Assembly: GCA_002269645.1 (NCBI GenBank)
Contig: NIVC01000495.1
Span: forward strand, 83,083-147,082
DNA: 64,000 bases
DNA from: Macrostomum lignano
Lineage: Eukaryota
Direction: 5' to 3'
Position numbers and translations under genes: made by a program. Under the pieces are notes generated by a model. That model saw only the letters and a list, made by a program, of their open reading frames with translations. It did not search any database and was not told the origin of the DNA. Numbering within the stretch: position 1 is the first letter of the stretch; each line of letters starts with the position of its first letter. Below are positions 26,607-61,435 of the stretch, one piece after another.

Positions 26607-26958
26607 TCAGTCCTTGGGCCCCTGGTAATAGGAGCAGCGCACCTTGGCGTCCCAGCCGGCGGACAGCAGGCGCTGCGAGTCGAACGGATGCCAGCTGACG
26701 TCGCGGACTGGCGCGTTGCCGTGGGCGCCAGGCAAACGGCGAAGCAGGCGGCCGCTCAGGCAGTCCCAGATCAGCACGTCGCCGTTGGCTGAGCCCGCGT
26801 ACACGTAGCGCTGGCCGGTGGTGGCCTGGGGAGAGAAGCGGGCCCTCAGCAGGGTGCGGGACACCACGTGGCCGGTGAGGGTGGCCAGGCTCGGGTCGTC
26901 TGACAGCGGCGTCGAGTCGAATTGCGGCACGGACTGGTAGCGGTAGTCGAACTGGTGG
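26607..26958 (-). CDS. DCAF11: DCAF11/WDR23 (CRL4 substrate receptor, WD40) terminal exon
   Basis: gccccag|HQFDYRYQSVP...GHVVSRTLLRARFSPQATTGQRYVYAGS...VRDVSWHPF...SAGWDAK*; follows the DCAF11 DYR..GH.V..TL.R.RFSP..TGQ..Y.G pattern. Confidence 0.93.
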
Positions 26959-26999
26959 CTGGGGCGGGAGCGGTTTGGTTCGGTCCAGTTGATTCTTGA

Positions 27000-27340
27000 A
27001 CTCAACTGCACCCTCCCAGATGCTCTCAAACTCAATCGCACCCTCCCAGATGCTCTCAAACTCAACTGCACCCTCCCAGATGCTCTCAAACTCAACTGCA
27101 CCCTCCCAGATGCTCTCAAACTCAACTGCACCCTCCCAGATGCTCTCAAACTCAACTGCACCCTCCCAGATGCTCTCAAACTCAACTGCACCCTCCCAGA
27201 TGCTCTCTAACTCAACTGCACCCTCCCAGATGCTCTCAAACTCAACTGCACCCTCCCAGATGCTCTCAAACTCAACTGCACCCTCCCAGATGCTCTCAAA
27301 CTCAACTGCACCCTCCCAGATGCTCTCAAATTCAACTTCA
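27000..27340. repeat. 30-bp minisatellite in the last DCAF11 intron (26959-27370)
   Basis: CTCAACTGCACCCTCCCAGATGCTCTCAAA x ~11. Confidence 0.95.
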
Positions 27341-27370
27341 TCCATGCAGATACTCAAAGCCACGCCTTAC

Positions 27371-27787
27371 CCAGCCACTTTTCTGCGACACTCGTTAGTG
27401 AAATTGTTGGAGGCCGGGCGCCGCAGATCCCACAGCTTGATGCTCTGATCCTTGCTGTTGCTGAGGAAGTGCCGGCCGTCCTGCCTGCTGTCCAGATAGA
27501 CAACTCCGCATTGGTGCCCGCTGAACATGGCGGCCGGAGGCGCAGTTGACGCGGACCGGAGGCAGCGCAGGTCCCACAATTTGATGATGCCGTCGTCGCC
27601 GGAGCTGAGCAGCAGATTCGAGCCCCGGCCGCCGTCGGCCCAGCAGACGGTGTTGACATCGTTGTGATGCCTGGCCGGGTACCACATGGGCCGGCGCATG
27701 GCCAGGTCGTACAGGCAGAGGGAGCCGCCGTTGCATCCCACAACGAGCAGGTCGCCGCAGGAGGACCAGCGGTGGCAGAACATGCCC
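27371..27787 (-). CDS. DCAF11: DCAF11 exon 4 (WD40 repeats)
   Basis: cagcag|GMFCHRWSS...HHNDVNTVCWAD...SSGDDGIIKLWDLR...GHQCGVVYLDS...SNSKDQSIKLWDLR...KVAG|gtaagg; DWD/WDxR motifs; NAGNAG acceptor (alternative end 27790). Confidence 0.95.
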
Positions 27788-27954
27788 CTGCTGGGCCCAG
27801 GGGTGTGGAATTGGGATTTATTGCGGACACTCTGAGAGTAGCTCGGCATGCCTGAGCCTAAGCATGCGGGTTTTGGATTATGAAAGTGAAATTCGGGATA
27901 TTGAGATTGGAGGATGATGGAATCTGAAATTTAGGATGATTGAATTTCAAACAG

Positions 27955-31662: not shown

Positions 31663-32747
31663 TCAGCTGAATAGGTCGCCAACACTGGGCAGGGGCGCCA
31701 GGCCGCCGGACACAGCGGGCAGGGAGGCCAGGTCCGGCAGGTTGGCCAGGTGGGAGCTCAGCTCCTTCTGCAGGCTGCGCAGCTCCCGCAGTCGGCGCCG
31801 CTGGTCCTCAAGCCGGCGCTGACCGGTGGCCAGGGCGGCACGCTGCTGGCGGCAGTAGGCGCGCAGGTCCGAGTGGAAGCCGCGGCGCCGCGCCACCTCG
31901 CTGGATAGCTGGGCGTTGTAGGCGGAGCAGACTTCGTCCGCCTGCGTCACCTCGCGGAGCAGCCGCTGGCAGTCTCGCCGGTTTTTGCAGGCGTCCACGG
32001 AGGCCTCCTCGACGATGTGCTTCGGGAAGCGAGATATTCGACGCCGCATCTCGGCGCTGCCGCTGGGTGCGGCGGCCAGGAACTGCAGCTCGGCGAGGAT
32101 CTGCTCCGAGTCCGGCTGCTCCTCCACCGCTTCGGCCTCGGCGGCTGCGGCAGCCGCTTCCCGGGCCTCGGCCAGGCCGGCACGGAGTGCCGACGCCGAC
32201 GCAGCGACACCGGCGCCGCCGCCGTAGCCGGTGGCGATGGCCGAACCGACGCCCACACCGTTGTTGTCATCATCGTCATCGCTGCCGACGCCGGCGTCCC
32301 GCAGTGCCGGGCTGACGGGACCCTCCTGCCCGCTGTCGTCGCTGTCACCCTCTTCTTCGTTCGGCAGATCGTCGTCATCGTCCTGCCCGACGGCCACACC
32401 GACGGCCACTGTCGCCGGAGCTGCTGCCGATGCGGCGCTGTCGGTGCCGGTCGACGCTGACGCGGTTTTGCCTTCGCTCTGCCGGCCGGCATTGCGTGGC
32501 GCGAATTTGTCCAGCATCTGGCGGCAGCACTGCAGCTGGTCGGGCTCGAACACGTGCCGCTCGTGCCAGATGCGGACCAGCCGGTCCAGGCTGGCCATCA
32601 CCTTGGCGTCGGCCGCCTTGGCGCAGTCCTTCATGGCGTGGGACAGCACGGCGCTGAACACGCGTAGGAACTCAGGGCCCTGCTTGCGGCTGTTCTGCAC
32701 AACATCGTTCATCAGGTAGAGCAGGGTCAGCTTCCGCTTTCGGTGCA
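31663..32747 (-). CDS. RPRD1B: RPRD1 (CID domain, Pol II CTD-associated; RPRD1A/B, CREPT-like) exon 2
   Basis: ttgacag|VHRKRKLTLLYLMNDVVQNSRKQGPEF...LVRIWHERHVF and C-terminal LPDLASLPAVSGGLAPLPSVGDLFS, both characteristic of RPRD1. Confidence 0.95.
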
Positions 32748-32886
32748 CTGTCAATGGGTGAGGGGTGGGCCTAAATTACATAAGTGCATATATGTGACAT
32801 TACTATTTCTATAGCCAATGCTTCATCAAAACAGACATTTTTGAGGCTTACTTCTTCACTAGCAAACAATCCTTGTACAAGCTATA

Positions 32887-33196
32887 TATTGGTTTTGTCA
32901 GCCTAACTGAGAATAAAGCCATCCAAAGTGAGAATCCTGCCTACGCTGACTGCGAAGGGCCTGGCTGCGTGCAGCCTAGTCTATGAGCCATAGACTATAA
33001 AGTAAAAGCAAAATAAAAGAATACGACGCATAGACCAATCGATTCTCACATTGGATGGCTTTTTATCACTTTGCTTGTCCTTTATTGTCTATGACCCATA
33101 GACTAAGGCTGCACGCAGCCAGGCCCTTCGCAGTCAGCGTAGGCAGGATTCTCACTTTGGATGGCTTTATTCTCAGTTAGGCTGACAAAACCAATA
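32887..33196. mobile_element. 310-bp MITE with ~90-bp perfect TIRs (TA flanks)
   Basis: TATTGGTTTTGTCAGCCTAACTGAG...GCGTGCAGCCT (32887-~32977) is the reverse complement of ~33107-33196; imperfect pairing continues ~30 bp further in. Confidence 0.9.
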
Positions 33197-33228: not shown

Positions 33229-35374
33229 GGGCCATATGCAGAAAGCTCTGTCTAGGGTAGTCTGGTCTTGAAAAGCTAGTCTGGACTTGGATTTGGTATG
33301 CAGAAACACAAACCCGTTGGATTTTGAGTTTTTAAAGTAGTCATGAAAGGTGAAGAGTTTTGCACCTTCTGCCTGACTTTCGCCTCTCTTATGCCTATTT
33401 TGTGCCACTTGTGCACCTTTCGTTCACCTGAGTGCCTCTGCAGGGTCAGAAGGTGAATTTAAGGCACGAACTAGGCGGTAGGGGCACAGGTGTCGTAGGG
33501 GAGTTAGGTGCATAAAAGGTGCACAGTGTGCATTATAGGCACAAAAGGTGAACAAAGTAGGAATTGGGGGCATTGGTGGAGTGAAAGGTGAAAAAGGTGC
33601 GCTGCGGTGGAGGTGCATAAAAAGTGTACAGTGTGCAATGGAGGCACGAAAGGTGAATAAAAGGTGCACAGTGGGCACTTTAGGCGTAGAGGCAATGCAA
33701 GGGGCGTTAAAGTTTCAATTGGCGAAGTTCTTTGCTACCTTTTCTCACTATTCGAAATTTTTCGTCACTAATGCAAACCTTTTTATCACTTTTCGGAACT
33801 TTTCCTGAGTATTTGAAAGTCATTAAAACTTATCAGTATAGGAAATGTTTACTTTCGTGGTTTGTCAGGATCAGGAAGGGGATAGCAGCGATTAGTATAG
33901 GTGTAAACAAAGCTTTTCTATGTTCAATCGGTGCATGCAATATACGAGTATGTAACTCTCAGTTAATTTTTTGTTACGAATTCTTAATGCGCTAATTCGT
34001 GCATAGGCATGAAAGGTGAGCGAGGTGCACAGAAGAGGCACTTTAGGGGTATATTTCGAGCGTGTTTTGGAAATGCACCTGTATACATATTTACGCCGCA
34101 CATGTACACCTTATGAACCTCTAATTCACCTTTCGTGCACTTTCTGCGCCCCTTCAGCACCTTTCCTACACCTGCTGTGCCTCACTTGTGAGCCTGCTGT
34201 TCACCTTTTGCGCACCTCCAGTGCCCCTTACGCACCTTTACTGCCCCTACCGCCCCAACCAATCAAAATTAAAAATTCACCTACTGCCTGACCACTTCAC
34301 CGATTTTACACCTTTCATGCCTCTTTTCAAAAATATTGGTGACATTTAGGCATAAAAGGTGCACTCAGGTGCATTTCCAAAACATGCACGAAATGGGCCA
34401 CTAAGGTGCCTCTTTTGTGCACCTCGCTCACCTTTTATGCCTCTGCAGGTGCATAACTTTTCCAACGGGAAAGTTAGACCGATCTACTATAGACAGAACT
34501 AGGGTAGCTAGACCATAGACTATAGACTGAACTACCCAAGTCTGAACTAGCTAGTCTGGACTAAGCTTTCTGCATATGGCTCATTCCATATAAGCATGGT
34601 CGTAACATGACAGGCTATTTTTACTTATAAAATGAAATCTAATAATAGCATTTACTAAACCAATATTTTAAATGAAAGATTATTTTGTCTAGAATATATT
34701 TATAGAGTTTCATATAGATATCATCATTAGTATAGATGCTATTAAACCTTAAATGACACTTATGGTCGTAACGACAGGATTTTTGACATATAGAAACTAA
34801 AAGGTAAAAGTCTTATAACATTTTTCATTTTTGATATTTTGCAAAAAATTTTTTTAATTTGACTAAGAACATCTTTAGAAGTCATACTCTTTAATTAGAA
34901 TATATAAACTCAAAAAGGCAACAAAGATACAAAAGAAAAGGCAGCCTTATGGTCGTAACATTATGGTCGTAACATATTTTTTTCTGTCAATTCAGTAACT
35001 TTGAGGTACTAATACATTAAAAATATAATAGATTATTTGGTCCCCAATGCTTTTATCTGATGATGTAAGTACTATACTTTTATCTATAGTTTGTTTCAAC
35101 CTTCAAAAGCTTTCTATTTGTTTTTAAAAGGTACAAAATCTTAATGATGTCTTTTGCTTCGAAAAATGTCCAAATTTTTACAAAAATGACTTTTTGCCAA
35201 TTGATAACATACTAATCCAACATTTTACCATTCCTTTATTCTTAGATTGTATATATTGCATATAAAAAACATTTGGTAAAATAAAAAAGGCTAATAAGGC
35301 AATGGCAAGCAAAAATATTGACTTTTTCTATTTTCCAAATATGTCCATCTTATATGGAATGAACCATATGGCCC
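33229..35374. mobile_element. Non-autonomous PIF/Harbinger-like element (GGGCC termini, 3-bp AAT TSD); right TIR interrupted by a MITE
   Basis: Left AAT|GGGCCATATGCAGAAAGCT; right AGCTTTCTGCATAT[insert 34578-35365 + ATAT]GGCCC|AAT. Superfamily inferred from termini only. Confidence 0.75.
34578..35365. mobile_element. 788-bp MITE family B, copy 1 (TIR GGCTCATTCCATATAAG, 4-bp TSD ATAT)
   Basis: TIRs at both ends; ATAT duplicated at 34574-34577 and 35366-35369; near-identical to copy 2. Confidence 0.92.
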
Positions 35375-36826: not shown

Positions 36827-36845
36827 TGGGCTTATTATTCGTACT

Positions 36846-37631
36846 GGCTCATTCCATATAAGCATGGTCGTAACATGACAGGTTATTTTTACTTATAAAA
36901 TGAAATCTAATAATAGAATATACTAAACCAATATTTTAAATGAAAGATTATTTTGTCTAGAATATATTTATAGAGTTTCATATAGATATCATCATTAGTA
37001 TAGATGCTATTAAACCTTAAATGACACTTATGGTCGTAACGACAGGATTTTTGACATATAGAAACTAAAAGGTAAAAGTCTTATAACATTTTTCATTTTT
37101 GATATTTTGCAATACATTTTTAAAATTTGACTAAGAACATCTTTAGAAATCATACTCTTTTATTAGAATATATAAACTCAAAAGGCAACAAAGATACAAA
37201 AGAAAAGGCAGCCTTATGGTCGTAACATTATGGTCGTAACATATTTTTTTCTGTCAATTCAGTAACTTTGAGGTACTAATACATTAAAAATATAATAGAT
37301 TATTTGGTCACCAATGCTTTTATCTGATGATGCAAGTACTATACTTTTATCTATAGTTTGTTTCAACCTTCAAAAGCTTTCTATTTGTTTTTAAAAGGTA
37401 CAAAATCTTAATGATGTCTTTTGCTTCGAAAAATGTCCAAATTTTTACAAAAATGACTTTTTGCCAATTGATAATATACTAATCCAACATTTTACCATTC
37501 CTTTATTCTTAGATTGTATATATTGCACAATATAAACATTTGGTAAAAAAATAGGCTAATTAGGCAATGGCAAGCAAAAATATTGACTTTTTTCTATTTT
37601 CCAAATATGTCCATCTTATATGGAATGAGCC
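36846..37631. mobile_element. 786-bp MITE family B, copy 2 (4-bp TSD TACT), inside the hAT element
   Basis: TACT|GGCTCATTCCATATAAG ... CTTATATGGAATGAGCC|TACT; direct repeat of 34578-35365. Confidence 0.92.
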
Positions 37632-38876: not shown

Positions 38877-39044
38877 ATGCGCAACTTTGGGTATCACCCA
38901 GCCATTTCTATTGGCAACACACACATGTAAGTCTCTATTGGCTAAGAGCAATCGCGTGACTACTATTCCATCCAATAGCAACTTACATGTGTGTGTTGCC
39001 AATAAAAACGGCCGAGTGAATCCCAAGGATTGCGCCCAAGCATG
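38877..39044. mobile_element. Short palindromic MITE family C, copy 1
   Basis: GGGTATCACCCAGCCATTTCTATTGGCAACACACACATGTAAG ... ACATGTGTGTGTTGCCAATAAAAACGGCCGAGTGAATCCC; homologous to 40993-41178. Confidence 0.8.
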
Positions 39045-40992: not shown

Positions 40993-41178
40993 AGTTTGGG
41001 CTTGAGGTCCTTGGGAATCACCCGGCCGTTTCTATTGGCAACACACACATGTAAGCCGCTATATTGGCTGAGAACAGTCACGTGGCTTCTATTCTGTCCA
41101 ATAGCGACATACATATACACTGTATGTGTGTTGCCAATAGAAACGGTTGGGTGAATCCCTAGGCTGCGCCCAAGCATG
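40993..41178. mobile_element. Short palindromic MITE family C, copy 2
   Basis: GGGAATCACCCGGCCGTTTCTATTGGCAACACACACATGTAAG ... GTATGTGTGTTGCCAATAGAAACGGTTGGGTGAATCCC. Confidence 0.8.
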
Positions 41179-43271: not shown

Positions 43272-44429
43272 ATGACTCACACTAGTTCTCAAAAACCAAC
43301 GCAAGCTGCATTTCTGCACCGTTGCGTGTCGTTGAATGACCGTCACAGCACGCAGGTGTTTACTTTCATTCTGCCGCCACACCTGCTCAAGGGATACCTA
43401 CCAGAGTGCAGTTCGAAAGACTTTGTCTACGCCTACCAAAAGTGGCGCGTGGTGTTCACCAGGGACGATCGGCACCTGGGCTGCTTCCTGGAGCTTCGGA
43501 GTCCTGCCGAGCGGACTGAAGTACGCCTCGATTTCAGCTTCACTGTACTCAACCGGAACCACTTTACGGGTAACGAGACCTATCAGGAGAAGGGCATGGT
43601 GTTTGGCCCGTCCTGCATTCAGCTGGGCCGAGCCACCTGCCTGTGCGTGGCTGATCTGGAGCAGAGAGGCTTCATGTTCCCGGATGGCCGCGCATTGGTC
43701 GAGGTTGAGCTGCGCAGTGCGAGCACCGAGTTCAAGGAGGAAATTCTTCCTTCGCTCAGGGATGTCAGGGGCCAGCTAGATGCCGAAAGCATTGAGAGTT
43801 CCTATTTTACCTTCGCCAGCTGTGACTGGAACATGGTCGTCAATGTCCGCGAGCCTGACGGATGCGGCCGCCTGCAACCCTGCCAACCCAGCCTTCTCAT
43901 GCAAAGGCACAACAGCTTTGATCACCTGTGCCGCATCCGTTACCGGGCCAGTTTTCAGGCTGGTGGCTACATCTTCCACACGGAGGTCATCGACCAGCTG
44001 CTGGACGCCAAAGGCTACGGCCCAGCCCAGTCAATCGGTCAAGCAGCAGCTGGTTTATTCGCAAGTCTCAGCCCCCGAACCCCTCTGCGGCTGAGCATCT
44101 CCTTGCTGTCCGTGTGGCCAGTAACCCCGGTGGATCTGATTCCTACCAGCAGAAATAAGAGCGCGGCCAGATGCTATGACACTGACAAGCAGCAGTGGGT
44201 GGTAGAGAGCGACATTCTCGGTCGACAGCTTAGGCTGCGCTTGTTCTACAGCGACGTCAAGAATGTGCCGCGACATTTTGCTCGTCTGGTCAGCTGGAAC
44301 GCCTGCGTGGTGCCTGCAGACAAGAGCAGGCCGCCTGTCTCTGCTCTTAACGGACCTTTCACGGGATATTACTCGCAGAAGGATGGGGACGGCGGCTTTG
44401 AGGTCGAGGTGGAGGTGCCGGTTGAGGAG
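43272..44429 (+). CDS. Uncharacterised tandem MATH/TRAF-like domain protein with C-terminal coiled coil: exon 1
   Basis: 386-codon ORF with MATH-like beta-sandwich pattern (SKDFVYAYQKWRVVF...HLGCFLEL...DFSFTVLN...GF...VEVEL; second ESSYFTFASCDWNMVV; third QQWVVES..LRLRLFY); ends at GAG|gtaagt. Confidence 0.85.
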
Positions 44430-46830
44430 GTAAGTCGGGATGGGGTTTGTTTTCTTCTTTAAAGATGGGATTTGGTAGCGTTCTACATGTAGCTGTGCTG
44501 TGCAATTAATATGAGCTGTTTTTTTAAATATGCTATATATAGTAAGGGCCCCAATCAGCTGAATATATTCCACTGCAAGTGAACTCACCTCGACATATTC
44601 TACTCAATAGAATAGAATATTTCGCAGTAGAAACGTTTCAGCTATTATAGATGATAATGGTAATGGGTATGATGCTCCACTCGTAATATGGGAAAGCGTT
44701 CATATTAAAGATCCTTGATCTTTGAAGACTTCTCAGATCTGTAATTAATTCTTGTGTAAACGAAAGGAGCTTCCTCGTCAAAAGTAATTCACGGCTCGGC
44801 TGCACCGCTCATCCATCAGGTCGCGAGACGCTGAGCTCAAGCGACTGAGGCTTAATCGAACGGATCAGTAATCTGCATGGAGACTGGCGGGAACAGGAGG
44901 CGAGGAGTTGCTCAGGGCCTGTGAGCACGCGGGCATGAATAAGCCAGGCTGCTGTCTCCCCAGGTCACATCTCGTCAATAATAGAGCCCTGTTGACAAGC
45001 TTTTAATCAATTGGTTGGCTGGCTGTGTGCTGTAGACACTGAGCAGAAATCCTCATACTCGAGGCCTTTTAATTAGTTTGATATGGGGGCCACTTCAGCT
45101 TCCTCCTTTGCGCCAAGGACTTCTAGTCAATGCGGCGCCAATCCCCAAATTCTGACGTTGAAATCCGGCTTGAGACTCGCCTTCCAAATGCAGACCTGAT
45201 TTGCATAAAGCTGCAGTTATTGATCGGCCTCTGCGGCAAGTTCATAGGGGTCCGAGACCATGTCAAAGCAGTTCTAGTTCAGCTGCCATTCGGTAGACCT
45301 CTCCTCTCTCTCTAGTGCTTGTCTCTACGGAAAGTCAGACAGGAAGCGTACAGCCGCAGAGCTCAGTGGGAAACTCCTGAATTTAGGTTTAATAGGATTC
45401 CGATTGGAATCTATCAAATAGGCACCGCTTCGTCCTCCGGTAAGCTATTTATGGTACAATTCTGCTACGTCAAGTGAAAATACCACTCTGTCACACAGAC
45501 TGAGTTAAATCTGAGTCGCTCTCGCTCATGGCTTTGCCAAAATTCTGATGGGGCACACAACGCGGCGTCCTGGTGTTGTAGAATGCTTTCTGATGAATTG
45601 CTTACAGATTTGGGAAAGCGATTCGTGGAGCATTTGCAACATAGTGAGATGCCTTGTTTACACACAAAGGCCTGTGTGTGTACAAGAGAGCCACTTTGTG
45701 GGCAGATGCCATGGCCGGATTTTCCAATTCCCTCTCGCTTCAGCCCCTCCCCAGCCCGATCCCATTCCAGCAGACTCTCGCATCTTTCTGTCCGCGGAAT
45801 TCGCCTGTCTTTTCTGAATATCCTCTTCTGCTCATCTCACTTTTTTTGCTAATTAGTGAAGGATAGGTATGCAGGCTGTGCCTCTCAGTCTGCTTTCGCG
45901 GCAGAGTTTCCTGACCCGCTGGCTGCCCCGCACCTCATCAGTCTCGGCCGTCTGTTGCTGCATGGCGATCGCAAAGTTTGCCTGCTCACGCTCGCGAGTT
46001 TGCGGGACCTGCCAGTCCGCATTCCGGACTCGCCCGATTGCAAAATCATGCGCATTTGTTTATTGCTGAATTAGGCGGAGAAAGCCCGCACTGACTTGCT
46101 GTTTGCTTGCCCCCCCCCCCTGCCGCCCGATCTTAAGCTGCGGGCAAAGCTAATCCACTGGAAATGACTGAGATGCTATATATGTTAGGCGGATATTGCC
46201 CTTGGGACAAAAATAAATGCCACTCGCTTCCCATTTCGCTTTGGGATCTTTGAATGCCTCCGCTGAGTCCTCATCTGCCTCTTTTATAATTATGCATCGA
46301 TGACTGAGCATCCCGAGTCCTTCAGCCCAGCCGATTTGCCAGGCCTGAAACTTGGACCACCCACGCACCTTGCTAAAAATGTCACAGGGGTTATGCGCTG
46401 AGCTGCTGGATGCTCTGAGTCCTTGCTTCTTGCTTTGACAGAAATCCGATTAACCTCTTTGGACAAATCTTATCGCACACTTAGTGAGACATTTCCGTGT
46501 GTAAGTCGTGCGTGCTGTAAGATACAAATTAGCTAGCATTTAGCATTTCAGAATAAGATTTGAATTCATTTATCCGAGTTTCATAGGATCTTATGCAACT
46601 CAATAAACGTTACTTGTTGCTGTATTATGGGTGCTCAGAAAACTCAGACCATAAAGCATGTTTATAGTACGTTACGTGGCGTCAGCTTATGCAATTGCTC
46701 TGCTGCCAGAAGAGGGGCATTAAAATACTAAGGTAATTATTGTTCTATTTTATGTCTATAACGACGGCATGTGTTTAGCGCTCTAATATCTATGGCCAAG
46801 ACATATATCGTTCGTGTATTACTATTACTA

Positions 46831-51156: not shown

Positions 51157-51441
51157 CAGGGGCGTCGCCATGGATTTTTATCGTGGGGGGGGGGAGGGGC
51201 TATATCTTCAGAATCGGTGTTGTCAGCACTCATTATAGCGCCGCAGGCACTCATTTTAGCGCCGCAGCCACTCATTTTAGCTCCGCAGGCACTTTGTTTG
51301 TCGACCTGCAGCAAAATTATTGCATGATTTCCATAACGAGTCACAAGGTGGGGTGGGGGACAAAGCATTGGCGTGTCCCCCCATATCTTTTACTCGGGGG
51401 GACATGTCCTCCCTGTCCCCCCCCCGTTGGCGACGCCCCTG
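51157..51441. mobile_element. 285-bp hAT-type MITE interrupting the gag relic
   Basis: TIR CAGGGGCGTCGCCA ... TGGCGACGCCCCTG; imperfect 8-bp flanks AAGCCAAG / CCGCCAAG; internal 21-bp triplication. Confidence 0.82.
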
Positions 51442-51825
51442 CCGCCAAGGCCTCGCTGCTGTCCGGCTGGAGGAGTGCGAGCTCCGATAGTTGGCAGCGA
51501 GAAAGTGCAGTACCCCCGAACACCCGAACCCGTACTCATGAGACGGAATTACACTTCCGGTTCTAACAACAAACTTTTGGCAAGCAGTGTTGCCGCTCCC
51601 GCATACAGTATATTTTTCAGAGAATATAGCTGTGTATGAGTACATTCTGTCGAGGACTTTGCTTAAAAACCCGGTAATCTCCCCAATAAAACAAATTAGA
51701 AAGACTTTTTTTACTCGAATACTAATAAATAATAATTAGTCAGCCACATATAATGAATCTAGGTTTTTTAAATAACCTTTTTACTACATCTAAATGCTGT
51801 TGTTCTTAATATTGTCACTAATCAA

Positions 51826-54800
51826 CCACCCGTGTTTGCTTAAAACTAACGAAAACAGCACGATTTAAGTTTTTTGTTTACGGTATGACAGCATGCTGGT
51901 TGCTGTCTCAGCTTGCTGGTTAATCGAAAAATGATTGTTACAATATCAACAAAGCTAGTTAACTTTTTAGCGCCAATAAATGCATTCATGTTTTAGTAGC
52001 TTGTTGCAGGACTCTCTTTCTGCTGTGGGTTTCTTGTTAGTTAGTTTTAGACATGCATCATGACGGTAGGCCTAGGCCCTTGCAGCTTAAATTTAAATGC
52101 TTTCTACTCGCTGAAGGCACGTGCGTGCGTGCTGCTGGCCGGCAACTAGGAAACTAGGGTCTAAAATCCATGTAGTTCTAAAACTGAGCTGGGGTGAAGG
52201 CTGTGTGGCTAAGCCTACACATGACATGCCTAAACTAGGCTTACTACTATAAGGCATTGAATTAGACCTAGGTTGTGCTGTACCTGTAGCTTAGTAGAGA
52301 TTTTTTAATAAAATAATTGGTTCTAATTCTAAATTCTAATACTATGGTATTAAACGAACTAACAAGTCTGGTTTATTTAAGTGAAGTTAATTGTGTTGTT
52401 TAAAAGGTAATCTAGCCACTTGGTATAGGCCTACTCCTACTCCTAGGCCTAGGCCAGCCCCAGTGGGCCTAGCCAGGTAGAAGTTTAGTAGTAGGTAGGC
52501 GGTAGGCCTAGTAGTTGAGTGAGTTGAGTTGAGTAGAAAAAAGTAGGGCCTAAGCCTTTGCTTCCCATATAGTCATATGCAAAAAATATCAGTTTTTATT
52601 CTAGAGAGTAAGAGAGACTAAGAGTGAGTGCAATTCTAGGTTTAGACCTAATTAGAAAAAATAACCAGATATTGCTATAAAGTAGGCTATAATGCTAATA
52701 TTGTATTGGCCATTAAAAAAATATTTGACTTTGAAAAAGTTCTTGGCTATAAAGTAGTGTATATTTCATTGCTATATTATAATATTAAATAGGCCGGCTT
52801 CCAGACAGTCTGGCGACACAGCCGTGTCCCACTCATGAGGCCATTCTATCCTCGGAAAACATGGCCTTGCAGCCCAGCAATGAATGTAGTGGTGTAGCGC
52901 TGCATGTATTTCTAGCTTTATTTTACATTGTATTGAAAACATTTGTGCATATATGCACAAAAAAGTTCTTTCATTGAAACGGTTATACCCTTTTACATTT
53001 TACATATATATTGGCAATGCCAATGCCAATGGCTTAATTTAATTTAAGCAGTTCTATACACCTAAAAATATGGGCCCTAAAATTTATGCTTTTTCTTCAG
53101 TTAGTGTTATGGTATATAAAAGGCGCATATATCCAAGACCTATCTATATAATATAATGGTATTTCTATATATAAATAGTAATGTTAATTGCTAAATAAAA
53201 AATAGAGCTTGACTAGTAAACCATTTGCTAGTATATGACTGGGTTATTATTTTTTATTAACAGAGCCAGATTTGTCTATATTGTTGATATATTTCTAGCC
53301 AAAGCATTATAGTATTAGTTGCCTATATTAGCTATTAGCTATGCCTTGCCTAGATATAGTATAGGGCCTTAATTCTATCTAGCCTAGGATAGAACTCTAT
53401 AGCTTTAAGGACTTAATTTTAATGTAGGCCTATTAAGTTTTTAATCCATTTTACACAAAATTGACTATTTGATTTGATATCAAACCTATTTAATTTAAGC
53501 CCTAGGCCTAGCCAAAATAAATCATTGCTAAATAGAATTGAAATTTAAAATTAAATATACTAGGCCTAGCCTACCAAAATTTATATATACCAAGTTATAT
53601 ATAGTGCTAGGCCTAGGGCTAAAGAAAAGTTGAACCCTAATAATACTATTAATTATACTAATGAATTAGTGAGTAAACTTGAAGCCTGCCTACTAGGCCT
53701 AATATAAATAATTAAGCATACAAGCAAATATTAGAGATTTAGTATATTTGGTTTGGATTAATATATTCTAATTAGGTCTATATTTGATTCAAAATAGCTA
53801 AGCCTACCTAAGCTTTAGCCTAGGCTAAAGATAAAAGCATGAATTTAGCCTTTTTATTGGATTAAAATATGTTTAGTTAGCATGCTTGGGTTGGGTGTAA
53901 ACCCCTTTTTCATCTTTCTATATCCTATTTTCTTATTCTCTATCTTCTATCCTTATACTCTTTTCTACCCTTTTTACCCTCCCCTTACCTTTTGATCCTA
54001 TCCTCTTCAACCTATCTCTATCCTTTTCTACTAGGTTCTACCCTTGTTTATAGCTTTACATTTATTTGTGGCTTCATTCTCTTAGCCCTAGCCCTAGCCC
54101 CAGCTTAGCCCTAGCTTGAGATCAAGCCCCAGCTCAAGCTCTAGCCACACCACAGCCCTAGCAGCCAGCTCTAGCTTAAGCTCAAGCACTAGCCCAGTCC
54201 CAGCCCTATCCCACTCTATCCCAGCCCCTAATCTAGCCCTAACCTTAGCCCTAGCCCTAGTTCCTCCCCTAGCCCTGGCCTTAGCCTTAGTGCTTGTTAT
54301 CCCTGCCCCAGCTCTGGCCCTATCACTATCCTGCCCTAGCCCTAGCCCTTGCCCTAGCCCCAGCCCTAGCCCCAGCCCCAGCCCTAGCCCCAGCCTTTGC
54401 CCTTGCCCTAGCCTTAGCCCAAGCCCAAGCCCCAGCCTTAGCCCCAGCCCCAGCCTTTGCCCTAGCCTTAGCCCAAGCCCAAGCCCTAGCCCTTGCCCTG
54501 CCCTAGCCCCTGCCCTAGCCCTAGCCCCAGCCCTTGCCCTAGCCTTAGCCCTAGCCCTAGCCTTAGCCCAAGCCCAAGCCCTAGCCCAAGCCCTAGCCTA
54601 AGCCCTTGCCCCTGCCCCTGCCCCTGCCCCTGCATTTGCCCTAGCCCCAGCCCCAGCCCCTGCCCTTGCCCTAGCCCTAGCCCCAGCCCCTGCCCTTGCC
54701 CTAGCCCTAGCCCCAGCCCCACCCCACCCAAGCCCTACCCCACCCCAGCGTCAGTCCTACCCCACCCCATCGCCAGCCCTACCCCACCCTAGCGCCAGCC

Positions 54801-57800
54801 CTACCCCACTCCAGCCCCAGCCCTACCCCACCCCAGCCCTACCCCAGCCCTACCCCACCCCAGCCCTACCCCATCTCAGCGCCAGCCCTACCCCATCCCA
54901 GTCTTGGCCCTAGACCCCAGAACTGGCCCTTTCACTATCCTAGCCCTAACCCCAGCAGAATTCTACTTCTTTGACTCCTGCACCCCTGCACTCCCTACAC
55001 CCCGTGCACTCCACATGTGCTGTTTGTATTTTTATGAATGCTTTTTTGTTGCTTTAATCATTAATTCCTCCCAGACAGTCCTTCTAGGCTATCTTTCCTA
55101 GGCAGCCCCCAGGCAAACCTTTCAAGGCAGCTTTCCCAGGCAAACCCTCCCAGACAGCCCCCCTACCCTCCTCTACTCTTCTATCCTCTCCTTACTCTTC
55201 TCTACCCTTTATCCTCCTACTCTCCTCTACTATCCTACACACCTCTATCCTTCTCTACCCTCTACCCCTTCTCTACCCTCTTCTACCAGCTCCTCCCCTC
55301 CTCTGCAGCTATACCCTTGTCTATTGCCTTAACCTCCGTTACCAGCCTCACCCCCTACTCTCCTCTACCAGCTCCTACCCTTCTCTGCCCTTCTACCATT
55401 TCCTACCCTCCTACCTTCTACTCTCCCCTGCCCTGCTCTACCCTTCGACACTTTCCCTTCTCTCTTCTACCAGCTCCTACCCTCCTCTACCAACTCTTAC
55501 CCTCCTAGCCTCCGCCATCAGCTCCTACCCTCCTATAACAGGAGGAATAACAGGATAATGAACCTAGATTAGATTCTATCTACTATACTAGGTTAGTAGC
55601 CTATCCTACCTACTAGGCTGGGTAAGGATGGGTAAGGAGAAGAATATCAAGGCTAGGGGAGAATAGCAAAGAGAAAAAGGGAGAGTGAAAGACCTTAAGC
55701 AAACTGACTTCAACTACTCAGAAGCTTCTAAAAGGAATATTTGAGCAACTATTAGCATATAAGGTAGGGCAGTTTAGCACAACTTGCCTAGTACGAGCTC
55801 GTAGATAGGTATATTAGGACTAACTAGCCTTGTAGGGTACAGAGTTGTTTAGCAACTACTAGTCAGGTAGATAGAGTGGATTAGTACCTAGAAGACTGGC
55901 AGGTTGACCCGCGAAGCCTAACAGACTATAAAGTAGATTAGCACCTATAAGTCTAGACGGTAGAATGATAGGTATTATATTTACTAGCCTAGTAGGTAGG
56001 ATAGGCTACTAACCTAGTATAGTAGATAGAATCTAATCTAGGTTCATTATCCTGTTATTCCTCCTGTTATAGGAGGGTAGGAGCTGATGGCGGAGGCTAG
56101 GAGGGTAAGAGTTGGTAGAGGAGGGTAGGAGCTGGTAGAAGAGAGAAGGGAAAGTGTCGAAGGGTAGAGCAGGGCAGGGGAGAGTAGAAGGTAGGAGGGT
56201 AGGAAATGGTAGAAGGGCAGAGAAGGGTAGGAGCTGGTAGAGGAGAGTAGGGGTGAGGCTGGTAACGGAGGTTAAGGCAATAGACAAGGGTATAGCTGCA
56301 GAGGAGGGGAGGAGCTGGTAGAAGAGGGTAGAGAAGGGGTAGAGGGTAGAGAAGGATAGAGGTGTGTAGGATAGTAGAGGAGAGTAGGAGGATAAAGGGT
56401 AGAGAAGAGTAAGGAGAGGATAGAAGAGTAGAGGAGGGTAGGGGGCTGTCTGGGAGGGTTTGCCTGGGAAAGCTGCCTTGAAAGGTTTGCCTGGGGGCTG
56501 CCTAGGAAAGATAGCCTAGAAGGACTGTCTGGGAGGAATTAATGATTAAAGCAACAAAAAAGCATTCATAAAAATACAAACAGCACATGTGGAGTGCACG
56601 GGGTGTAGGGAGTGCAGGGGTGCAGGAGTCAAAGAAGTAGAATTCTGCTGGGGTTAGGGCTAGGATAGTGAAAGGGCCAGTTCTGGGGGTCTAGGGCCAA
56701 GACTGGGATGGGGTAGGGCTGGCGCTGAGATGGGGTAGGGCTGGGGTGGGGTAGGGCTGGGTAGGGCTGGGGTGGGGTAGGGCTGGGGCTGGAGTGGGGT
56801 AGGGCTGGCGCTAGGGTGGGGTAGGGCTGGCGATGGGGTGGGGTAGGACTGACGCTGGGGTGGGGTAGGGCTTGGGTGGGGTGGGGCTGGGGCTAGGGCT
56901 AGGGCAAGGGCAGGGGCTGGGGCTAGGGCTAGGGCAAGGGCAGGGGCTGGGGCTGGGGCTAGGGCAAATGCAGGGGCAGGGGCAGGGGCAGGGGCAAGGG
57001 CTTAGGCTAGGGCTTGGGCTAGGGCTTGGGCTTGGGCTAAGGCTAGGGCTAGGGCTAAGGCTAGGGCAAGGGCTGGGGCTAGGGCTAGGGCAGGGGCTAG
57101 GGCAGGGGCAAGGGCTAGGGCTTGGGCTTGGGCTAAGGCTAGGGCAAAGGCTGGGGCTGGGGCTAAGGCTGGGGCTTGGGCTTGGGCTAAGGCTAGGGCA
57201 AGGGCAAAGGCTGGGGCTAGGGCTGGGGCTGGGGCTAGGGCTGGGGCTAGGGCAAGGGCTAGGGCTAGGGCAGGATAGTGATAGGGCCAGAGCTGGGGCA
57301 GGGATAACAAGCACTAAGGCTAAGGCCAGGGCTAGGGGAGGAACTAGGGCTAGGGCTAAGGTTAGGGCTAGATTAGGGGCTGGGATAGAGTGGGATAGGG
57401 CTGGGACTGGGCTAGTGCTTGAGCTTAAGCTAGAGCTGGCTGCTAGGGCTGTGGTGTGGCTAGAGCTTGAGCTGGGGCTTGATCTCAAGCTAGGGCTAAG
57501 CTGGGGCTAGGGCTAGGGCTAAGAGAATGAAGCCACAAATAAATGTAAAGCTATAAACAAGGGTAGAACCTAGTAGAAAAGGATAGAGATAGGTTGAAGA
57601 GGATAGGATCAAAAGGTAAGGGGAGGGTAAAAAGGGTAGAAAAGAGTATAAGGATAGAAGATAGAGAATAAGAAAATAGGATATAGAAAGATGAAAAAGG
57701 GGTTTACACCCAACCCAAGCATGCTAACTAAACATATTTTAATCCAATAAAAAGGCTAAATTCATGCTTTTATCTTTAGCCTAGGCTAAAGCTTAGGTAG

Positions 57801-59778
57801 GCTTAGCTATTTTGAATCAAATATAGACCTAATTAGAATATATTAATCCAAACCAAATATACTAAATCTCTAATATTTGCTTGTATGCTTAATTATTTAT
57901 ATTAGGCCTAGTAGGCAGGCTTCAAGTTTACTCACTAATTCATTAGTATAATTAATAGTATTATTAGGGTTCAACTTTTCTTTAGCCCTAGGCCTAGCAC
58001 TATATATAACTTGGTATATATAAATTTTGGTAGGCTAGGCCTAGTATATTTAATTTTAAATTTCAATTCTATTTAGCAATGATTTATTTTGGCTAGGCCT
58101 AGGGCTTAAATTAAATAGGTTTGATATCAAATCAAATAGTCAATTTTGTGTAAAATGGATTAAAAACTTAATAGGCCTACATTAAAATTAAGTCCTTAAA
58201 GCTATAGAGTTCTATCCTAGGCTAGATAGAATTAAGGCCCTATACTATATCTAGGCAAGGCATAGCTAATAGCTAATATAGGCAACTAATACTATAATGC
58301 TTTGGCTAGAAATATATCAACAATATAGACAAATCTGGCTCTGTTAATAAAAAATAATAACCCAGTCATATACTAGCAAATGGTTTACTAGTCAAGCTCT
58401 ATTTTTTATTTAGCAATTAACATTACTATTTATATATAGAAATACCATTATATTATATAGATAGGTCTTGGATATATGCGCCTTTTATATACCATAACAC
58501 TAACTGAAGAAAAAGCATAAATTTTAGGGCCCATATTTTTAGGTGTATAGAACTGCTTAAATTAAATTAAGCCATTGGCATTGGCATTGCCAATATATAT
58601 GTAAAATGTAAAAGGGTATAACCGTTTCAATGAAAGAACTTTTTTGTGCATATATGCACAAATGTTTTCAATACAATGTAAAATAAAGCTAGAAATACAT
58701 GCAGCGCTACACCACTACATTCATTGCTGGGCTGCAAGGCCATGTTTTCCGAGGATAGAATGGCCTCATGAGTGGGACACGGCTGTGTCGCCAGACTGTC
58801 TGGAAGCCGGCCTATTTAATATTATAATATAGCAATGAAATATACACTACTTTATAGCCAAGAACTTTTTCAAAGTCAAATATTTTTTAAATGGCCAATA
58901 CAATATTAGCATTATAGCCTACTTTATAGCAATATCTGGTTATTTTTTCTAATTAGGTCTAAACCTAGAATTGCACTCACTCTTAGTCTCTCTTACTCTC
59001 TAGAATAAAAACTGATATTTTTTGCATATGACTATATGGGAAGCAAAGGCTTAGGCCCTACTTTTTTCTACTCAACTCAACTCACTCAACTACTAGGCCT
59101 ACCGCCTACCTACTACTAAACTTCTACCTGGCTAGGCCCACTGGGGCTGGCCTAGGCCTAGGAGTAGGAGTAGGCCTATACCAAGTGGCTAGATTACCTT
59201 TTAAACAACACAATTAACTTCACTTAAATAAACCAGACTTGTTAGTTCGTTTAATACCATAGTATTAGAATTTAGAATTAGAACCAATTATTTTATTAAA
59301 AAATCTCTACTAAGCTACAGGTACAGCACAACCTAGGTCTAATTCAATGCCTTATAGTAGTAAGCCTAGTTTAGGCATGTCATGTGTAGGCTTAGCCACA
59401 CAGCCTTCACCCCAGCTCAGTTTTAGAACTACATGGATTTTAGACCCTAGTTTCCTAGTTGCCGGCCAGCAGCACGCACGCACGTGCCTTCAGCGAGTAG
59501 AAAGCATTTAAATTTAAGCTGCAAGGGCCTAGGCCTACCGTCATGATGCATGTCTAAAACTAACTAACAAGAAACCCACAGCAGAAAGAGAGTCCTGCAA
59601 CAAGCTACTAAAACATGAATGCATTTATTGGCGCTAAAAAGTTAACTAGCTTTGTTGATATTGTAACAATCATTTTTCGATTAACCAGCAAGCTGAGACA
59701 GCAACCAGCATGCTGTCATACCGTAAACAAAAAACTTAAATCGTGCTGCTTTCGTTAGTTTTAAGCAAACACGGGTGG
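51826..59778. repeat. Giant inverted repeat: arms 51826-55619 and 55986-59778, 366-bp spacer
   Basis: Outer ends CCACCCGTGTTTGCTTAAAAC... / ...GTTTTAAGCAAACACGGGTGG; inner ends ...CCTACCTACTAGGCT / AGCCTAGTAGGTAGG...; only about three differences noticed; mirrored ORFs in the track (52772-52960 vs 58644-58832). Confidence 0.97.
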
Positions 59779-60044
59779 ATAAGCAAAAAATCAAGGACGA
59801 CTTAAGTAGAAGGACGGGAAACCTCGTTTCTTAGAAAAGTTTTGAAGGCACTTTTTCCCGAAAAAATACACTACGGAGATAGGAAGTTTTCATTTTTTCA
59901 GCACAAAAATTGTTATTGCGTTTGATAGGAGGCAGATCCAGTGTTCATCTTTTGATATGTTGTGCCTTTTTTATTGCTCTATCGATATTTAAAAAGCTTT
60001 TCGTTCAGAAAATTAGGATTCTATGTTAATTTTTTATTTGCAGC

Positions 60045-60975
60045 CAGTCCTGACACTAATTTGATTTGCAACCAGTCCTGACACTAATTTGATTTGCAGC
60101 CAGTCCTGACACTAATTTGATTTGCAGCCAGTCCTAACACTAATTTGATTTGCAGCCAGTCCTGACACTAATTTGATTTGCAGCCAGTCCTGACACTAAT
60201 TTGATTTGCAGCCAGTCCTGACACTAATTTGATTTGCAGCCAGTCCTGACACTAATTTGATTTGCAACCAGTCTTGACACTAATTTGATTTGCAGCCAGT
60301 TTTGACACAAATTTAATTTGCAGCCAGTCCTGACACTAATTTGATTTGCAACCAGTCCTGACACTAATTTGATTTGCAGCCAGTCCTGACACTCATTTGA
60401 TTTGCAACCAGTCCTGACACTAATTTGATTTGCAGCCAGTCCTGACACTGATTTGATTTGCAACCAGTCCTGACACTAATTTGATTTGCAGCCAGTCCTG
60501 ACACTGATTTGATTTGCAACCAGTCCTGACACTAATTTGATTTGCAGCCAGTCCTGACACTAATTTGATTTGCAGCCAGTCCTGACACTGATTTGATTTG
60601 CAACCAGTCCTGACACTAATTTGATTTGCAACCAGTCCTGACACTAATTTGATTTGCAACCAGTCCTGACACTAATTCGATTTGCAGCCAGTCCTGACAC
60701 TAATTTGATTTGCAACCAGTCCTGACACTAATTTGATTTGCAACCAGTCCTGACACTAATTTGATTTGCAACCAGTCCTGACACTAATTCGATTTGCAGC
60801 CAGTCCTGACACTAATTTGATTTGCAACCAGTCCTGACACTAATTTGATTTGCAGCCAGTCCTGACACTAATTTGATTTGCAACCAGTCCTGACACTAAT
60901 TTGATTTGCAGCCAGTCCTGACACTAATTTGATTTGCAACCAGTCCTGACACTAATTTGATTTGCAGCCAGTCCC
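60045..60975. repeat. 28-bp minisatellite ending in the splice acceptor of the acidic-protein gene
   Basis: GATTTGCAGCCAGTCCTGACACTAATTT x ~33; the last unit runs into ...TTTGCAG|CCAGTCCCAGCCATAATG. Confidence 0.95.
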
Positions 60976-60982
60976 AGCCATA

Positions 60983-61435
60983 ATGTCCACTGAGAACAGC
61001 AACGACCAGGAGGCTTCGGTTGACCGGGACCTAAACTTGAAGAAGCCCGCCAACGACCTTGCCGACGATTCCTGCGAGGGCGAAGGTGCCAACGGCGAAG
61101 AGGGCGACGCCGCCGGCGAGGACAACAGCCGCGCCAACGAATCTGACGATGACGAGGACGAGGGCGAGAGCGACGCTGAGGAGGATGAAGGAGAGGAGCC
61201 CGGCGAGGGCTACGGGGATGGCGATGGCGAAAGCGAGGCCGCTGCCAACAACAGTCGGAAGCGTCGCGTTGAGGATAACGAAGACGAAGAGGACGAGGAG
61301 GAGGTCGGCGACCAGGACTTCGACGAGGACGAGGCTGAGGAGGCCGTGCCGGAGAAGCGGTCGCGCCGAGCGCTGCCAGGCGACAGCAACAGCAACAGTC
61401 GGCAGTCGGTGGACGAGGTCAGCTCGTCTGCTTGA
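60983..61435 (+). CDS. Asp/Glu-rich protein N-terminus with NLS-like motifs (identity unknown; may splice at 61417)
   Basis: MSTENSNDQEASVDRDLNLKKP...RKRRVEDNEDEEDEEE...PEKRSRR; GC-rich codon usage like the other exons; possible donor GAG|gtcagc at 61418. Confidence 0.65.
   Translation: MSTENSNDQEASVDRDLNLKKPANDLADDSCEGEGANGEEGDAAGEDNSRANESDDDEDEGESDAEEDEGEEPGEGYGDGDGESEAAANNSRKRRVEDNEDEEDEEEVGDQDFDEDEAEEAVPEKRSRRALPGDSNSNSRQSVDEVSSSA

What the first reader, a model, noticed from the sequence alone, without database searches (positions are those of the whole stretch)
51826..59778. 7.95-kb near-perfect palindrome with unique flanks and no TSD
Seen: 3.79-kb arms differ at only about three positions that I noticed (a substitution at 51855/59749 and single-C indels near 54490 and 54915), around a 366-bp spacer. 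No target-site duplication or transposase is visible, and the flanks on the two sides are unrelated. Inference: a recent foldback element, a template-switch inverted duplication, or a palindrome kept by arm-to-arm gene conversion; it could extrude a cruciform or produce long dsRNA. Unique flanks on both sides argue against a simple hairpin-read artefact but do not exclude misassembly.
Basis: seen in the sequence. Interest (0 to 1): 0.7.

Follow-up and report, generated by a model that had tools for sequence, protein, structure and literature searches.

The report
Young foldback-like palindrome in flatworm DNA
A 7.95-kb, almost perfect, non-coding DNA palindrome sits in a repeat-rich stretch of the flatworm Macrostomum lignano genome; it most likely is a recently inserted foldback-type mobile element, a known kind of repeat, though only the original sequencing reads or the genome's duplicate copies can prove it is real and mobile.

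Summary
The palindrome is real in the sequence. The arms are 51826-55619 and 55986-59778, around a unique 366-nt spacer. They differ at 7 positions, not about 3: two substitutions and five single-C indels, all in C-runs, which look like leftover long-read consensus errors. There is no adjacent target-site duplication, the flanks are unrelated in both orientations, the arms have no coding capacity, and there is no adapter sequence at the centre.

The window is Macrostomum lignano: a neighbouring gene is 99% identical to one of its proteins. Published assemblies of this genome are PacBio CLR-based and rich in tandem repeats.

The new evidence is compositional. Outer arm, inner arm and spacer share a signature (CTAG 4-5x over-represented; 18 of the window's 19 TAGGCCTA) that both flanks lack, while the flanks resemble each other. 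The unit therefore looks like one foreign block inserted into host DNA. Each arm is built like a foldback transposon arm: unique flanking domain, tandem-repeat domain, inner domain, then a non-coding middle.

Best reading: a young, non-autonomous foldback-type element (about 0.45). Rivals are an in-situ inverted duplication (about 0.25) and an assembly artefact (about 0.17). Copy number, empty sites and read support could not be tested here. Interest is modest.

The parts
51826..55619 (+). Left arm of the palindrome (3794 nt)
   Evidence: reverse-complement match to 55986-59778, with 7 differences in total.
51826..54082 (+). Outer 'flanking' domain of the arm. It is unique and AT-rich (GC about 0.26-0.43), with 9 copies of the palindromic octamer TAGGCCTA in two clusters, and is about 2-fold enriched in short palindromes. 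The terminus reads CCACCCGTGTTTGC.
   Evidence: CTAG O/E 4.1, GGCC O/E 10. TAGGCCTA occurs 18 of 19 times in the arms, against 2.2 expected in the whole window. No ORF exceeds 75 codons.
54083..54901 (+). Tandem-repeat domain of the arm. It holds about 136 degenerate copies of TAGCCC (= CTAGGG, a one-base variant of the TTAGGG telomere unit) grading into 16/22-nt GCCCTACCCCACCCCA(GCGCCA) units. The complementary strand is G-quadruplex-prone.
   Evidence: TRF; 16 G4 motifs per arm, lying between 54086 and 55163 in the left arm.
54902..55619 (+). Inner domain of the arm: pyrimidine-rich (purine fraction 0.24-0.31), non-tandem, CTAG-rich.
   Evidence: CTAG O/E 4.9.
55620..55985 (.). Unique, non-palindromic spacer or 'middle domain' (366 nt). 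It shares the arms' CTAG-rich signature and starts purine-rich.
   Evidence: no similarity to the arms, the flanks or its own reverse complement beyond a 12-mer. CTAG O/E 5.1; tetranucleotide r is 0.37-0.47 with the arm parts and -0.13 to 0.01 with the flanks; no sequencing adapter.
55792..55803 (.). 12-nt perfect palindrome TACGAGCTCGTA, centred about 5 nt from the geometric centre of the whole structure (55802).
   Evidence: About 0.2 such 12-mers are expected in the spacer. Its significance is unknown.
55986..59778 (-). Right arm (3793 nt), the mirror image of the left arm with the same three domains in reverse order (tandem domain 56703-57521).
51576..51825 (.). Left host flank next to the insertion: AT-rich (GC 0.32) and CTAG-poor.
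59779..60031 (.). Right host flank next to the insertion: AT-rich (GC 0.33) and CTAG-poor, followed by a 28-nt minisatellite at 60032-60974.

Best explanation
This is a genuine, evolutionarily very young, non-coding foldback-type repeat element, meaning a long-TIR, non-autonomous DNA element, inserted into an AT-rich intergenic stretch of the Macrostomum lignano genome.

Each 3.79-kb arm has a unique flanking domain, a tandem-repeat domain and an inner domain. A 366-nt non-coding middle domain joins the two arms.

Inferred, not shown: the element was mobilised in trans by a transposase encoded elsewhere, which recognises the termini. Alternatively it was born when a 4.2-kb element copy was converted into a foldback. 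The arms are identical either because the event is recent or because the arms repair each other by gene conversion. The five C-run indels are consensus errors, so the true arms differ at no more than 2 sites.

Likely consequences, also inferred: a local hotspot for replication stalling and ectopic recombination, and a long hairpin RNA (a small-RNA source) if the locus is transcribed through.
For: Shown:
- The structure has sharp ends, and the flanks are unrelated.
- Outer arm, inner arm and spacer share one unusual composition. CTAG O/E is 4.1, 4.9 and 5.1, against 0.11-0.74 in the flanks and 0.63 in the rest of the window. Tetranucleotide profiles correlate at 0.37-0.57 among the palindrome parts and at -0.13 to 0.22 with the flanks. 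The two flanks correlate with each other and with the rest of the window at 0.41-0.77. The 250 nt on either side have matching GC of 0.32 and 0.33. This fits a foreign block dropped into continuous host DNA.
- TAGGCCTA is essentially private to the arms: 18 of 19 copies, with 2.2 expected.
- The arm layout matches that described for the foldback element Tetris: flanking domain, tandem-repeat domain, inner domain and a non-coding middle domain (PMC4079207).
- The size has precedent. A transposase-less Galileo copy is 9,021 bp long with TIRs of 4,246 and 4,680 bp that contain tandem repeats (PMC4168063).
- The arms and spacer have no coding capacity, which is usual for foldback copies.
- DNA transposons were probably active recently in this genome: a perfect-armed MITE-like element lies at 32887-33196.

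Against an artefact:
- The spacer is unique and non-palindromic and contains no adapter.
- The arms disagree at only 0.18% of positions, and either arm can carry the longer C-run. This suggests two independently built, well-supported consensus stretches (inference).
Against: - There is no target-site duplication at the ends. The best candidate is a 6-nt AATCAA displaced by 10 nt on one side (P about 0.04), which is not convincing. In Galileo about 89% of copies with intact ends have identical TSDs, so this counts against the foldback reading by roughly 5-10 fold.
- No second copy of the arm, spacer or terminus exists in the 64-kb window. None was found in the public collections searched, but these hold essentially no flatworm DNA.
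- No transposase was identified.
- In classical FB elements the two arms often differ in repeat number; here they are equal.
- The termini match no superfamily consensus that I could verify.
Confidence: 0.45

Rival explanations
1. In-situ inverted duplication. A pre-existing 4.2-kb CTAG-rich segment (one arm plus the spacer, perhaps an old element copy) was copied in reverse next to itself. The mechanism would be fold-back repair or a replication template switch, triggered by fork stalling at the G-quadruplex-prone and pyrimidine-rich tract near the centre, followed by a switch back to the original template.
For: - Near-identical arms, a unique spacer of a few hundred nt and no TSD are what this mechanism predicts.
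- Sixteen G4 motifs per arm, plus a strongly strand-asymmetric tract, lie in the inner third of each arm. This offers a plausible stalling site (inference).
- Equal arm lengths, including every degenerate hexamer variant, follow automatically from copying.
Against: - Neither novel junction shows convincing microhomology. There is only a 4-nt GTAA match offset by 1-2 nt at the spacer edge and nothing at 59778/59779.
- The model needs two coincidences: the copied segment must start within about 130-240 nt of the left edge of the compositional island, and the copy must be inserted exactly at the island's right edge.
- The flanks resemble each other rather than the spacer.
Confidence: 0.25
2. Assembly or library artefact. 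Only one arm plus the spacer exists in the animal, and the second arm was created by a chimeric molecule or read, or by a misjoin in a long-read assembly of a very repeat-rich, redundant polyploid genome.
For: - The published M. lignano assemblies are PacBio CLR-based (Canu plus Pilon), fragmented and redundant.
- All five indels between the arms are C-run length errors typical of such consensus, so base-level quality here is imperfect.
- 29% of the window is tandem arrays.
- No independent read or assembly evidence could be obtained.
Against: - A missed-adapter or template-complement read gives a palindrome with no spacer or an adapter spacer, and its far side mirrors the near flank. Here the spacer is 366 nt of unique, native-looking, non-palindromic sequence with no adapter, and the far flank is unrelated.
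- The window has no Ns or scaffold gaps.
- An arm built from one chimeric read should carry many more errors than the 0.18% seen (inference).
- Random chimeras are not expected to win a deep-coverage consensus (the paper reports 130x PacBio coverage).
Confidence: 0.17
3. An old palindrome whose arms are kept identical by continuing arm-to-arm gene conversion, in the manner of sex-chromosome ampliconic palindromes, rather than a recent event.
For: - Arm identity is at least 99.8%, around a unique spacer.
- One of the only two substitutions lies 30 nt from the outer edge (51855), where conversion tracts would reach least often. This is a single data point.
Against: - The arms contain no genes that selection could act on.
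- Nothing shows an age greater than the arm divergence.
- The palindrome does not fade into diverged outer arms; the boundary is abrupt.
Confidence: 0.08

Closest known systems
Foldback-type DNA transposons (Drosophila FB, Tetris of D. virilis, long-TIR Galileo copies, sea-urchin TU elements)
   Same: - Very long terminal inverted repeats make up almost the whole element.
- Each TIR is modular: a unique flanking domain, then internal tandem repeats, then an inner domain, around a short non-coding middle domain.
- There is no transposase in the copy.
- The kb-scale size has precedent: 9-kb Galileo copies with 4.2-4.7-kb TIRs.
   Different: - No 7-10-bp TSD.
- Copy number is unknown and no cognate transposase is known.
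- The internal repeats are a 6-mer and 16/22-mers, a telomere-variant CTAGGG motif, rather than the 10-31-bp or 220-bp units of FB and Tetris.
- The two arms are equal in repeat number.
Fold-back inversions, i.e. inverted duplications produced by replication template switching or hairpin-capped break repair (described in yeast, C. elegans, and human CNVs and cancers)
   Same: Identical inverted arms separated by a unique spacer of a few hundred nt, no TSD, and secondary-structure-prone DNA near the centre.
   Different: - Those events usually run on to a chromosome end or are part of DUP-TRP/INV-DUP structures with junction microhomology.
- Here the structure is bounded on both sides, has no clear microhomology, and coincides with a compositional island.
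Hairpin (hpRNA) loci, i.e. long inverted repeats that yield endogenous siRNAs (Drosophila hpRNA genes)
   Same: A long inverted repeat with a loop, which would fold into a perfect 3.8-kb dsRNA stem if transcribed.
   Different: No evidence of transcription, a promoter or small RNAs was available, and the arms match no gene in the window.
Missed-adapter or template-complement palindromic reads, and whole-genome-amplification chimeras in long-read data (PMC6218980 describes the latter)
   Same: Kb-scale near-perfect palindromes in long-read-derived sequence.
   Different: - Those palindromes have no spacer or an adapter spacer, and their flanks are mirrored.
- Here the spacer is unique and asymmetric, with unrelated flanks on both sides.

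Membership tests
Foldback-type transposons | Long terminal inverted repeats that make up most of the element | tested here: met
   3.79-kb arms make up 95% of a 7.95-kb unit.
Foldback-type transposons | Modular TIRs with internal tandem repeats between a unique flanking domain and an inner domain, plus a non-coding middle domain (as defined for Tetris, PMC4079207) | tested here: met
   Domains are 51826-54082 (unique), 54083-54901 (tandem 6/16/22-mers), 54902-55619 (inner) and 55620-55985 (middle), with no ORFs.
Foldback-type transposons | Target-site duplication of 7-10 bp flanking the termini | tested here: not met
   No adjacent direct repeat of 2 nt or more. The best displaced repeat is AATCAA, 10 nt off on the right, P about 0.04. 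About 11% of Galileo copies with intact ends also lack identical TSDs.
Foldback-type transposons | Several dispersed copies sharing the terminal sequences | not testable with these tools
   No other copy in the window. The collections searched hold no flatworm genome.
Foldback-type transposons | A cognate transposase (MULE/FB- or P-type) somewhere in the genome | not testable with these tools
   The window ORFs tested gave no transposase domain. The rest of the genome was not available.
Template-switch or fold-back inverted duplication | Inverted arms separated by a unique spacer, without a TSD | tested here: met
Template-switch or fold-back inverted duplication | Microhomology, or short pre-existing inverted repeats, at the novel junctions | tested here: inconclusive
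   Only a 4-nt GTAA match offset 1-2 nt from the arm/spacer junction, and none at 59778/59779.
Template-switch or fold-back inverted duplication | An ancestral state with a single arm plus spacer at the same locus | not testable with these tools
   This needs the homeologous blocks of the M. lignano assembly, or sister species.
Long-read hairpin or chimera artefact | Palindrome centre with no spacer, or with adapter sequence | tested here: not met
   The spacer is 366 nt, unique and non-palindromic. No SMRTbell or ONT adapter was found within 3 mismatches.
Long-read hairpin or chimera artefact | Far flank mirrors the near flank, or the palindrome runs to a contig end or gap | tested here: not met
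   The flanks are unrelated in both orientations, at least 4.2 kb of sequence follows the right arm, and the window has no Ns.
Long-read hairpin or chimera artefact | No spanning reads, with arm depth half the flank depth | not testable with these tools
Gene-conversion-maintained ampliconic palindromes | Arms carry genes, and the palindrome is older than its arm divergence (shared across species) | tested here: not met
   The arms have no coding capacity. Age across species could not be tested.

The most novel reading that the evidence does not exclude
The unit could be the first recognised copy of a flatworm-specific class of long-hairpin element. It would be marked by CTAG/TAGGCCTA-rich arms and a telomere-variant (CTAGGG)n array, would insert without a target-site duplication (for example by a hairpin-intermediate or self-priming mechanism rather than classical cut-and-paste), and would serve as a hairpin-RNA source for small-RNA silencing in stem cells or the germline.
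Probability: 0.06. Interest if true: 0.65.

Novelty: new member of a known kind. Interest (0 to 1): 0.3.

Why it matters
If real, this is a very recent structural event in a model regenerative flatworm whose genome is known to be hard to assemble and is still reshaping after a whole-genome duplication. It would show that long-TIR foldback-type elements, which cause inversions and seed satellite DNA in Drosophila, are present and probably active in Macrostomum. It would also mark a likely fragile or recombination-prone site. If it is an artefact, it flags a class of error worth screening for in this assembly. In both cases it is one example of a known phenomenon and does not address a long-standing open question.

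Tried and rejected
1. Independent assemblies. Exact-protein look-ups of the neighbouring MATH-like ORF and its two homologues found nothing, or only an unrelated 4.9-kb metagenome contig.
2. A 985-aa composite query of stop-to-stop translations from the arm, spacer, both junction types and the near flanks, run against the 5.8-billion-protein collection, gave no hit.
3. The outer arm searched against plasmid and phage records in distant mode gave no match.
4. The 22-nt terminus searched in the metagenome, GTDB-genome and IMG/VR collections gave no match. This says little for an animal genome.
5. Rfam at gathering thresholds (whole window) and at permissive thresholds (51300-56100), plus a tRNA scan, found nothing relevant.
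6. Telomere-fusion relic: rejected. The arrays read (CCCTAG)n then (CTAGGG)n on the + strand, the opposite of a head-to-head telomere fusion, and the unit is a one-base variant of the telomere repeat (reasoning from the known TTAGGG orientation).
7. Two head-to-head copies of an ordinary transposon or LTR: rejected. Neither arm has its own TSD, TG..CA ends or a poly-A tail.
8. Virus or linear-plasmid ITRs: rejected. Only 366 nt lie between the arms, and nothing there is coding.
9. Hidden degenerate palindrome in the spacer: rejected. Only a 12-mer is self-complementary.
10. Literature on M. lignano (PMC5730564, PMC10733133, PMC12801592) does not mention palindromes or foldback elements.
Full report
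OBSERVATION

The repeat finder and a global alignment of the left half against the reverse complement of the right half give these parts:
- Left arm 51826-55619 (3794 nt).
- Right arm 55986-59778 (3793 nt).
- Spacer 55620-55985 (366 nt).

BLAST identity between the arms is 99.8%.

- Two substitutions, at 51855/59749 and 52715/58889.
- Five single-C indels, at 54495, 54842, 54914, 55158 and 55351.

Every indel lies in a C-run of 3-6 nt, and either arm can be the longer one. None falls in the longer A/T runs, although the arm has one A7, five A6 and four T6.

Beyond the arms the alignment falls to noise. The 5 kb to the left and the 4.2 kb to the right share nothing in either orientation; the best blastn hit is 27 nt at E=0.06. 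There is no adjacent direct repeat of 2 nt or more. The best displaced candidate is AATCAA, flush with the left end but 10 nt away from the right end, and 4% of random position pairs do as well. No other copy of the arm, spacer or terminus occurs in the window.

WHOSE DNA THIS IS

The window has no tRNA or Rfam hits. Tandem arrays make up 29% of it, with at least 15 different minisatellites.

It carries ordinary animal genes. A CID+CREPT (RPRD1-type) ORF at 31663-32754 is 99% identical to a Macrostomum lignano UniProt protein. A MATH-like ORF at 43272-44462 has its best hit, 70% identity, in the same species. So the window is M. lignano or a very close relative.

The literature describes this genome as follows:
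- It was assembled from PacBio CLR reads with Canu and polished with Pilon.
- More than half is repetitive, with 15% simple and tandem repeats (PMC5730564).
- About 70% of the assembly lies in three-copy paralogous blocks (PMC10733133).

C-run length errors are the expected residue of such a consensus. Short-read polishing works poorly where reads map equally well to two identical arms (inference). I therefore take the true arms to differ at two sites at most.

ANATOMY

Each arm has three domains.

1. An outer unique domain, 51826-54082.
- It is AT-rich.
- It carries nine copies of the palindromic octamer TAGGCCTA in two clusters. 18 of the window's 19 copies are in the arms, against 2.2 expected by chance in the whole window.
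- Short palindromes are about two-fold enriched.

2. A tandem domain, 54083-54901.
- It has about 136 degenerate TAGCCC units. This is (CTAGGG)n, a one-base variant of the TTAGGG telomere unit.
- These grade into 16/22-nt units.
- Most of the arm's sixteen G-quadruplex motifs (which span 54086-55163) fall here.

3. An inner pyrimidine-rich domain, 54902-55619.

The spacer is unique. It has no similarity to the arms, the flanks or its own reverse complement, except for a 12-nt palindrome, TACGAGCTCGTA, about 5 nt from the geometric centre.

Nothing here is coding. Stops occur every 15-30 codons in the unique parts, and no ORF exceeds 75 codons outside the low-complexity arrays. A composite query of all longer reading frames found nothing among 5.8 billion proteins.

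THE MOST INFORMATIVE NEW RESULT: COMPOSITION

CTAG observed/expected ratios:
- Outer arm 4.1, inner arm 4.9, spacer 5.1.
- The three flank segments 0.11, 0.38 and 0.74.
- The rest of the window 0.63.

Tetranucleotide profiles:
- The three palindrome parts correlate with each other at r = 0.37-0.57.
- They correlate with the flanks at only -0.13 to 0.22.
- The two flanks correlate with each other and with the rest of the window at 0.41-0.77.

The 250 nt on either side of the palindrome are both AT-rich (GC 0.32 and 0.33) and CTAG-poor.

So arm, spacer and arm form one compositional island, set into DNA that looks continuous across it. A discrete insertion predicts exactly this. An in-situ duplication of local DNA would need two coincidences: the copied segment must start at the island's left edge, and the copy must land at its right edge.

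COMPARISON WITH KNOWN KINDS

Foldback transposons are defined by very long TIRs built from a flanking domain, an internal tandem-repeat domain and an inner domain, around a non-coding middle domain. Tetris is the example I used, with TSDs of 8-10 bp (PMC4079207). This unit follows that plan domain for domain.

The size has precedent. A transposase-less Galileo copy is 9,021 bp long, with TIRs of 4,246 and 4,680 bp that contain tandem repeats (PMC4168063).

The one defining feature I could test that fails is the TSD. In Galileo about 89% of copies with intact ends have identical TSDs. A missing TSD therefore weakens the case but does not exclude it. In Drosophila, ectopic recombination between copies is known to exchange flanks (background section of that paper).

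Copy number and a cognate transposase could not be tested.

A perfect-armed MITE-like element elsewhere in the window suggests that DNA transposons were recently active in this genome. It has 91-nt arms at 32887-32977 and 33106-33196, a 128-nt spacer, and ends compatible with a TA duplication.

ARTEFACT?

A missed-adapter or template-complement read gives a palindrome with no spacer or an adapter spacer, and the far side mirrors the near flank. The evidence here does not fit that pattern:
- The spacer is 366 nt of native-looking, non-palindromic sequence.
- No SMRTbell or ONT adapter is present within three mismatches.
- The far flank is unrelated.
- The window has no Ns.
- The arms disagree at only 0.18% of positions, with errors on either arm. 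This suggests two independently built, well-covered consensus stretches rather than an arm resting on a single chimeric read (inference).

I could not see reads, so an artefact remains possible.

MECHANISM AND WEIGHTS

- Best (about 0.45): a genuine, very young, non-autonomous foldback-type element. It was either mobilised in trans, or arose when a 4.2-kb element copy was turned into a foldback. Its arms are identical because the event is recent or because of arm-to-arm conversion.
- Rival 1 (about 0.25): an in-situ inverted duplication by fold-back repair or template switching at the G4-prone tract. It fits the missing TSD and the equal arms. It lacks junction microhomology and needs the compositional coincidences described above.
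- Rival 2 (about 0.17): an assembly artefact.
- Rival 3 (about 0.08): an old palindrome maintained by gene conversion.

With a 366-nt spacer, cruciform extrusion from duplex DNA is unlikely. Snap-back of single strands during replication is possible, as is a long hairpin RNA if the locus is transcribed (my own knowledge of inverted-repeat behaviour, not tested).

VERDICT

- The feature is a new member of a known kind, and interest is modest (0.3).

Noticed in passing
window 32887-33196: A second perfect inverted repeat: 91-nt arms (32887-32977 and 33106-33196, 100% complementary) around a 128-nt spacer. It is MITE-like, its ends are compatible with a TA target duplication (Tc1/mariner style), and its sequence is unrelated to the big palindrome.
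   Followed up: partly
window 38879-39029 and 41008-41169: Two copies (87-90% identical over the matched stretches) of a short hairpin-forming, MITE-like repeat (TTGGG.ATCACCC.GCC.TTTCTATTGGCAACACACACATGTAAG...), each an inverted repeat with a 30-77-nt loop.
   Followed up: no
window 34577-35365 and 36845-37631: About 790-nt direct repeats, 98-99% identical and 2267 nt apart, inside a very AT-rich block (34-40 kb, GC 0.25-0.38). This could be an LTR pair of a small element or a tandem duplication. The block's tetranucleotide profile partly resembles the palindrome's outer arm (r = 0.53), and it holds the only TAGGCCTA outside the arms (39668).
   Followed up: partly
window 5962-12966: A 7-kb array of a 10-nt unit (TCTAAGCCTC, about 708 copies, 88% matches) with extreme GC skew (-0.6). 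Overall, tandem arrays of at least 15 different units cover 29% of the window.
   Followed up: no
window 55792-55803: A 12-nt perfect palindrome, TACGAGCTCGTA, lies within about 5 nt of the geometric centre of the 7.95-kb structure. About 0.2 such 12-mers are expected by chance in the spacer. Its meaning is unknown.
   Followed up: partly
window 31663-32754 (-) and 26548-27849 (-): An RPRD1-type gene (CID + CREPT domains), 99% identical to an M. lignano protein. Nearby WD40-like exons appear to be interrupted by, or fused with, a 30-nt tandem array at 26999-27337.
   Followed up: partly
window 43272-44462 (+): An intact 396-aa ORF with a weak MATH-domain match. It has only two relatives in the 5.8-billion-protein collection (70% to an M. 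lignano protein annotated as DUF2071, 35% to a metagenome protein), so it belongs to a lineage-restricted family.
   Followed up: partly
window 60962-61435 (+): A highly acidic 157-aa ORF (D/E-rich) 1.2 kb to the right of the palindrome, preceded by a 28-nt minisatellite at 60032-60974. It may be the nearest gene on that side, but its identity was not established.
   Followed up: no
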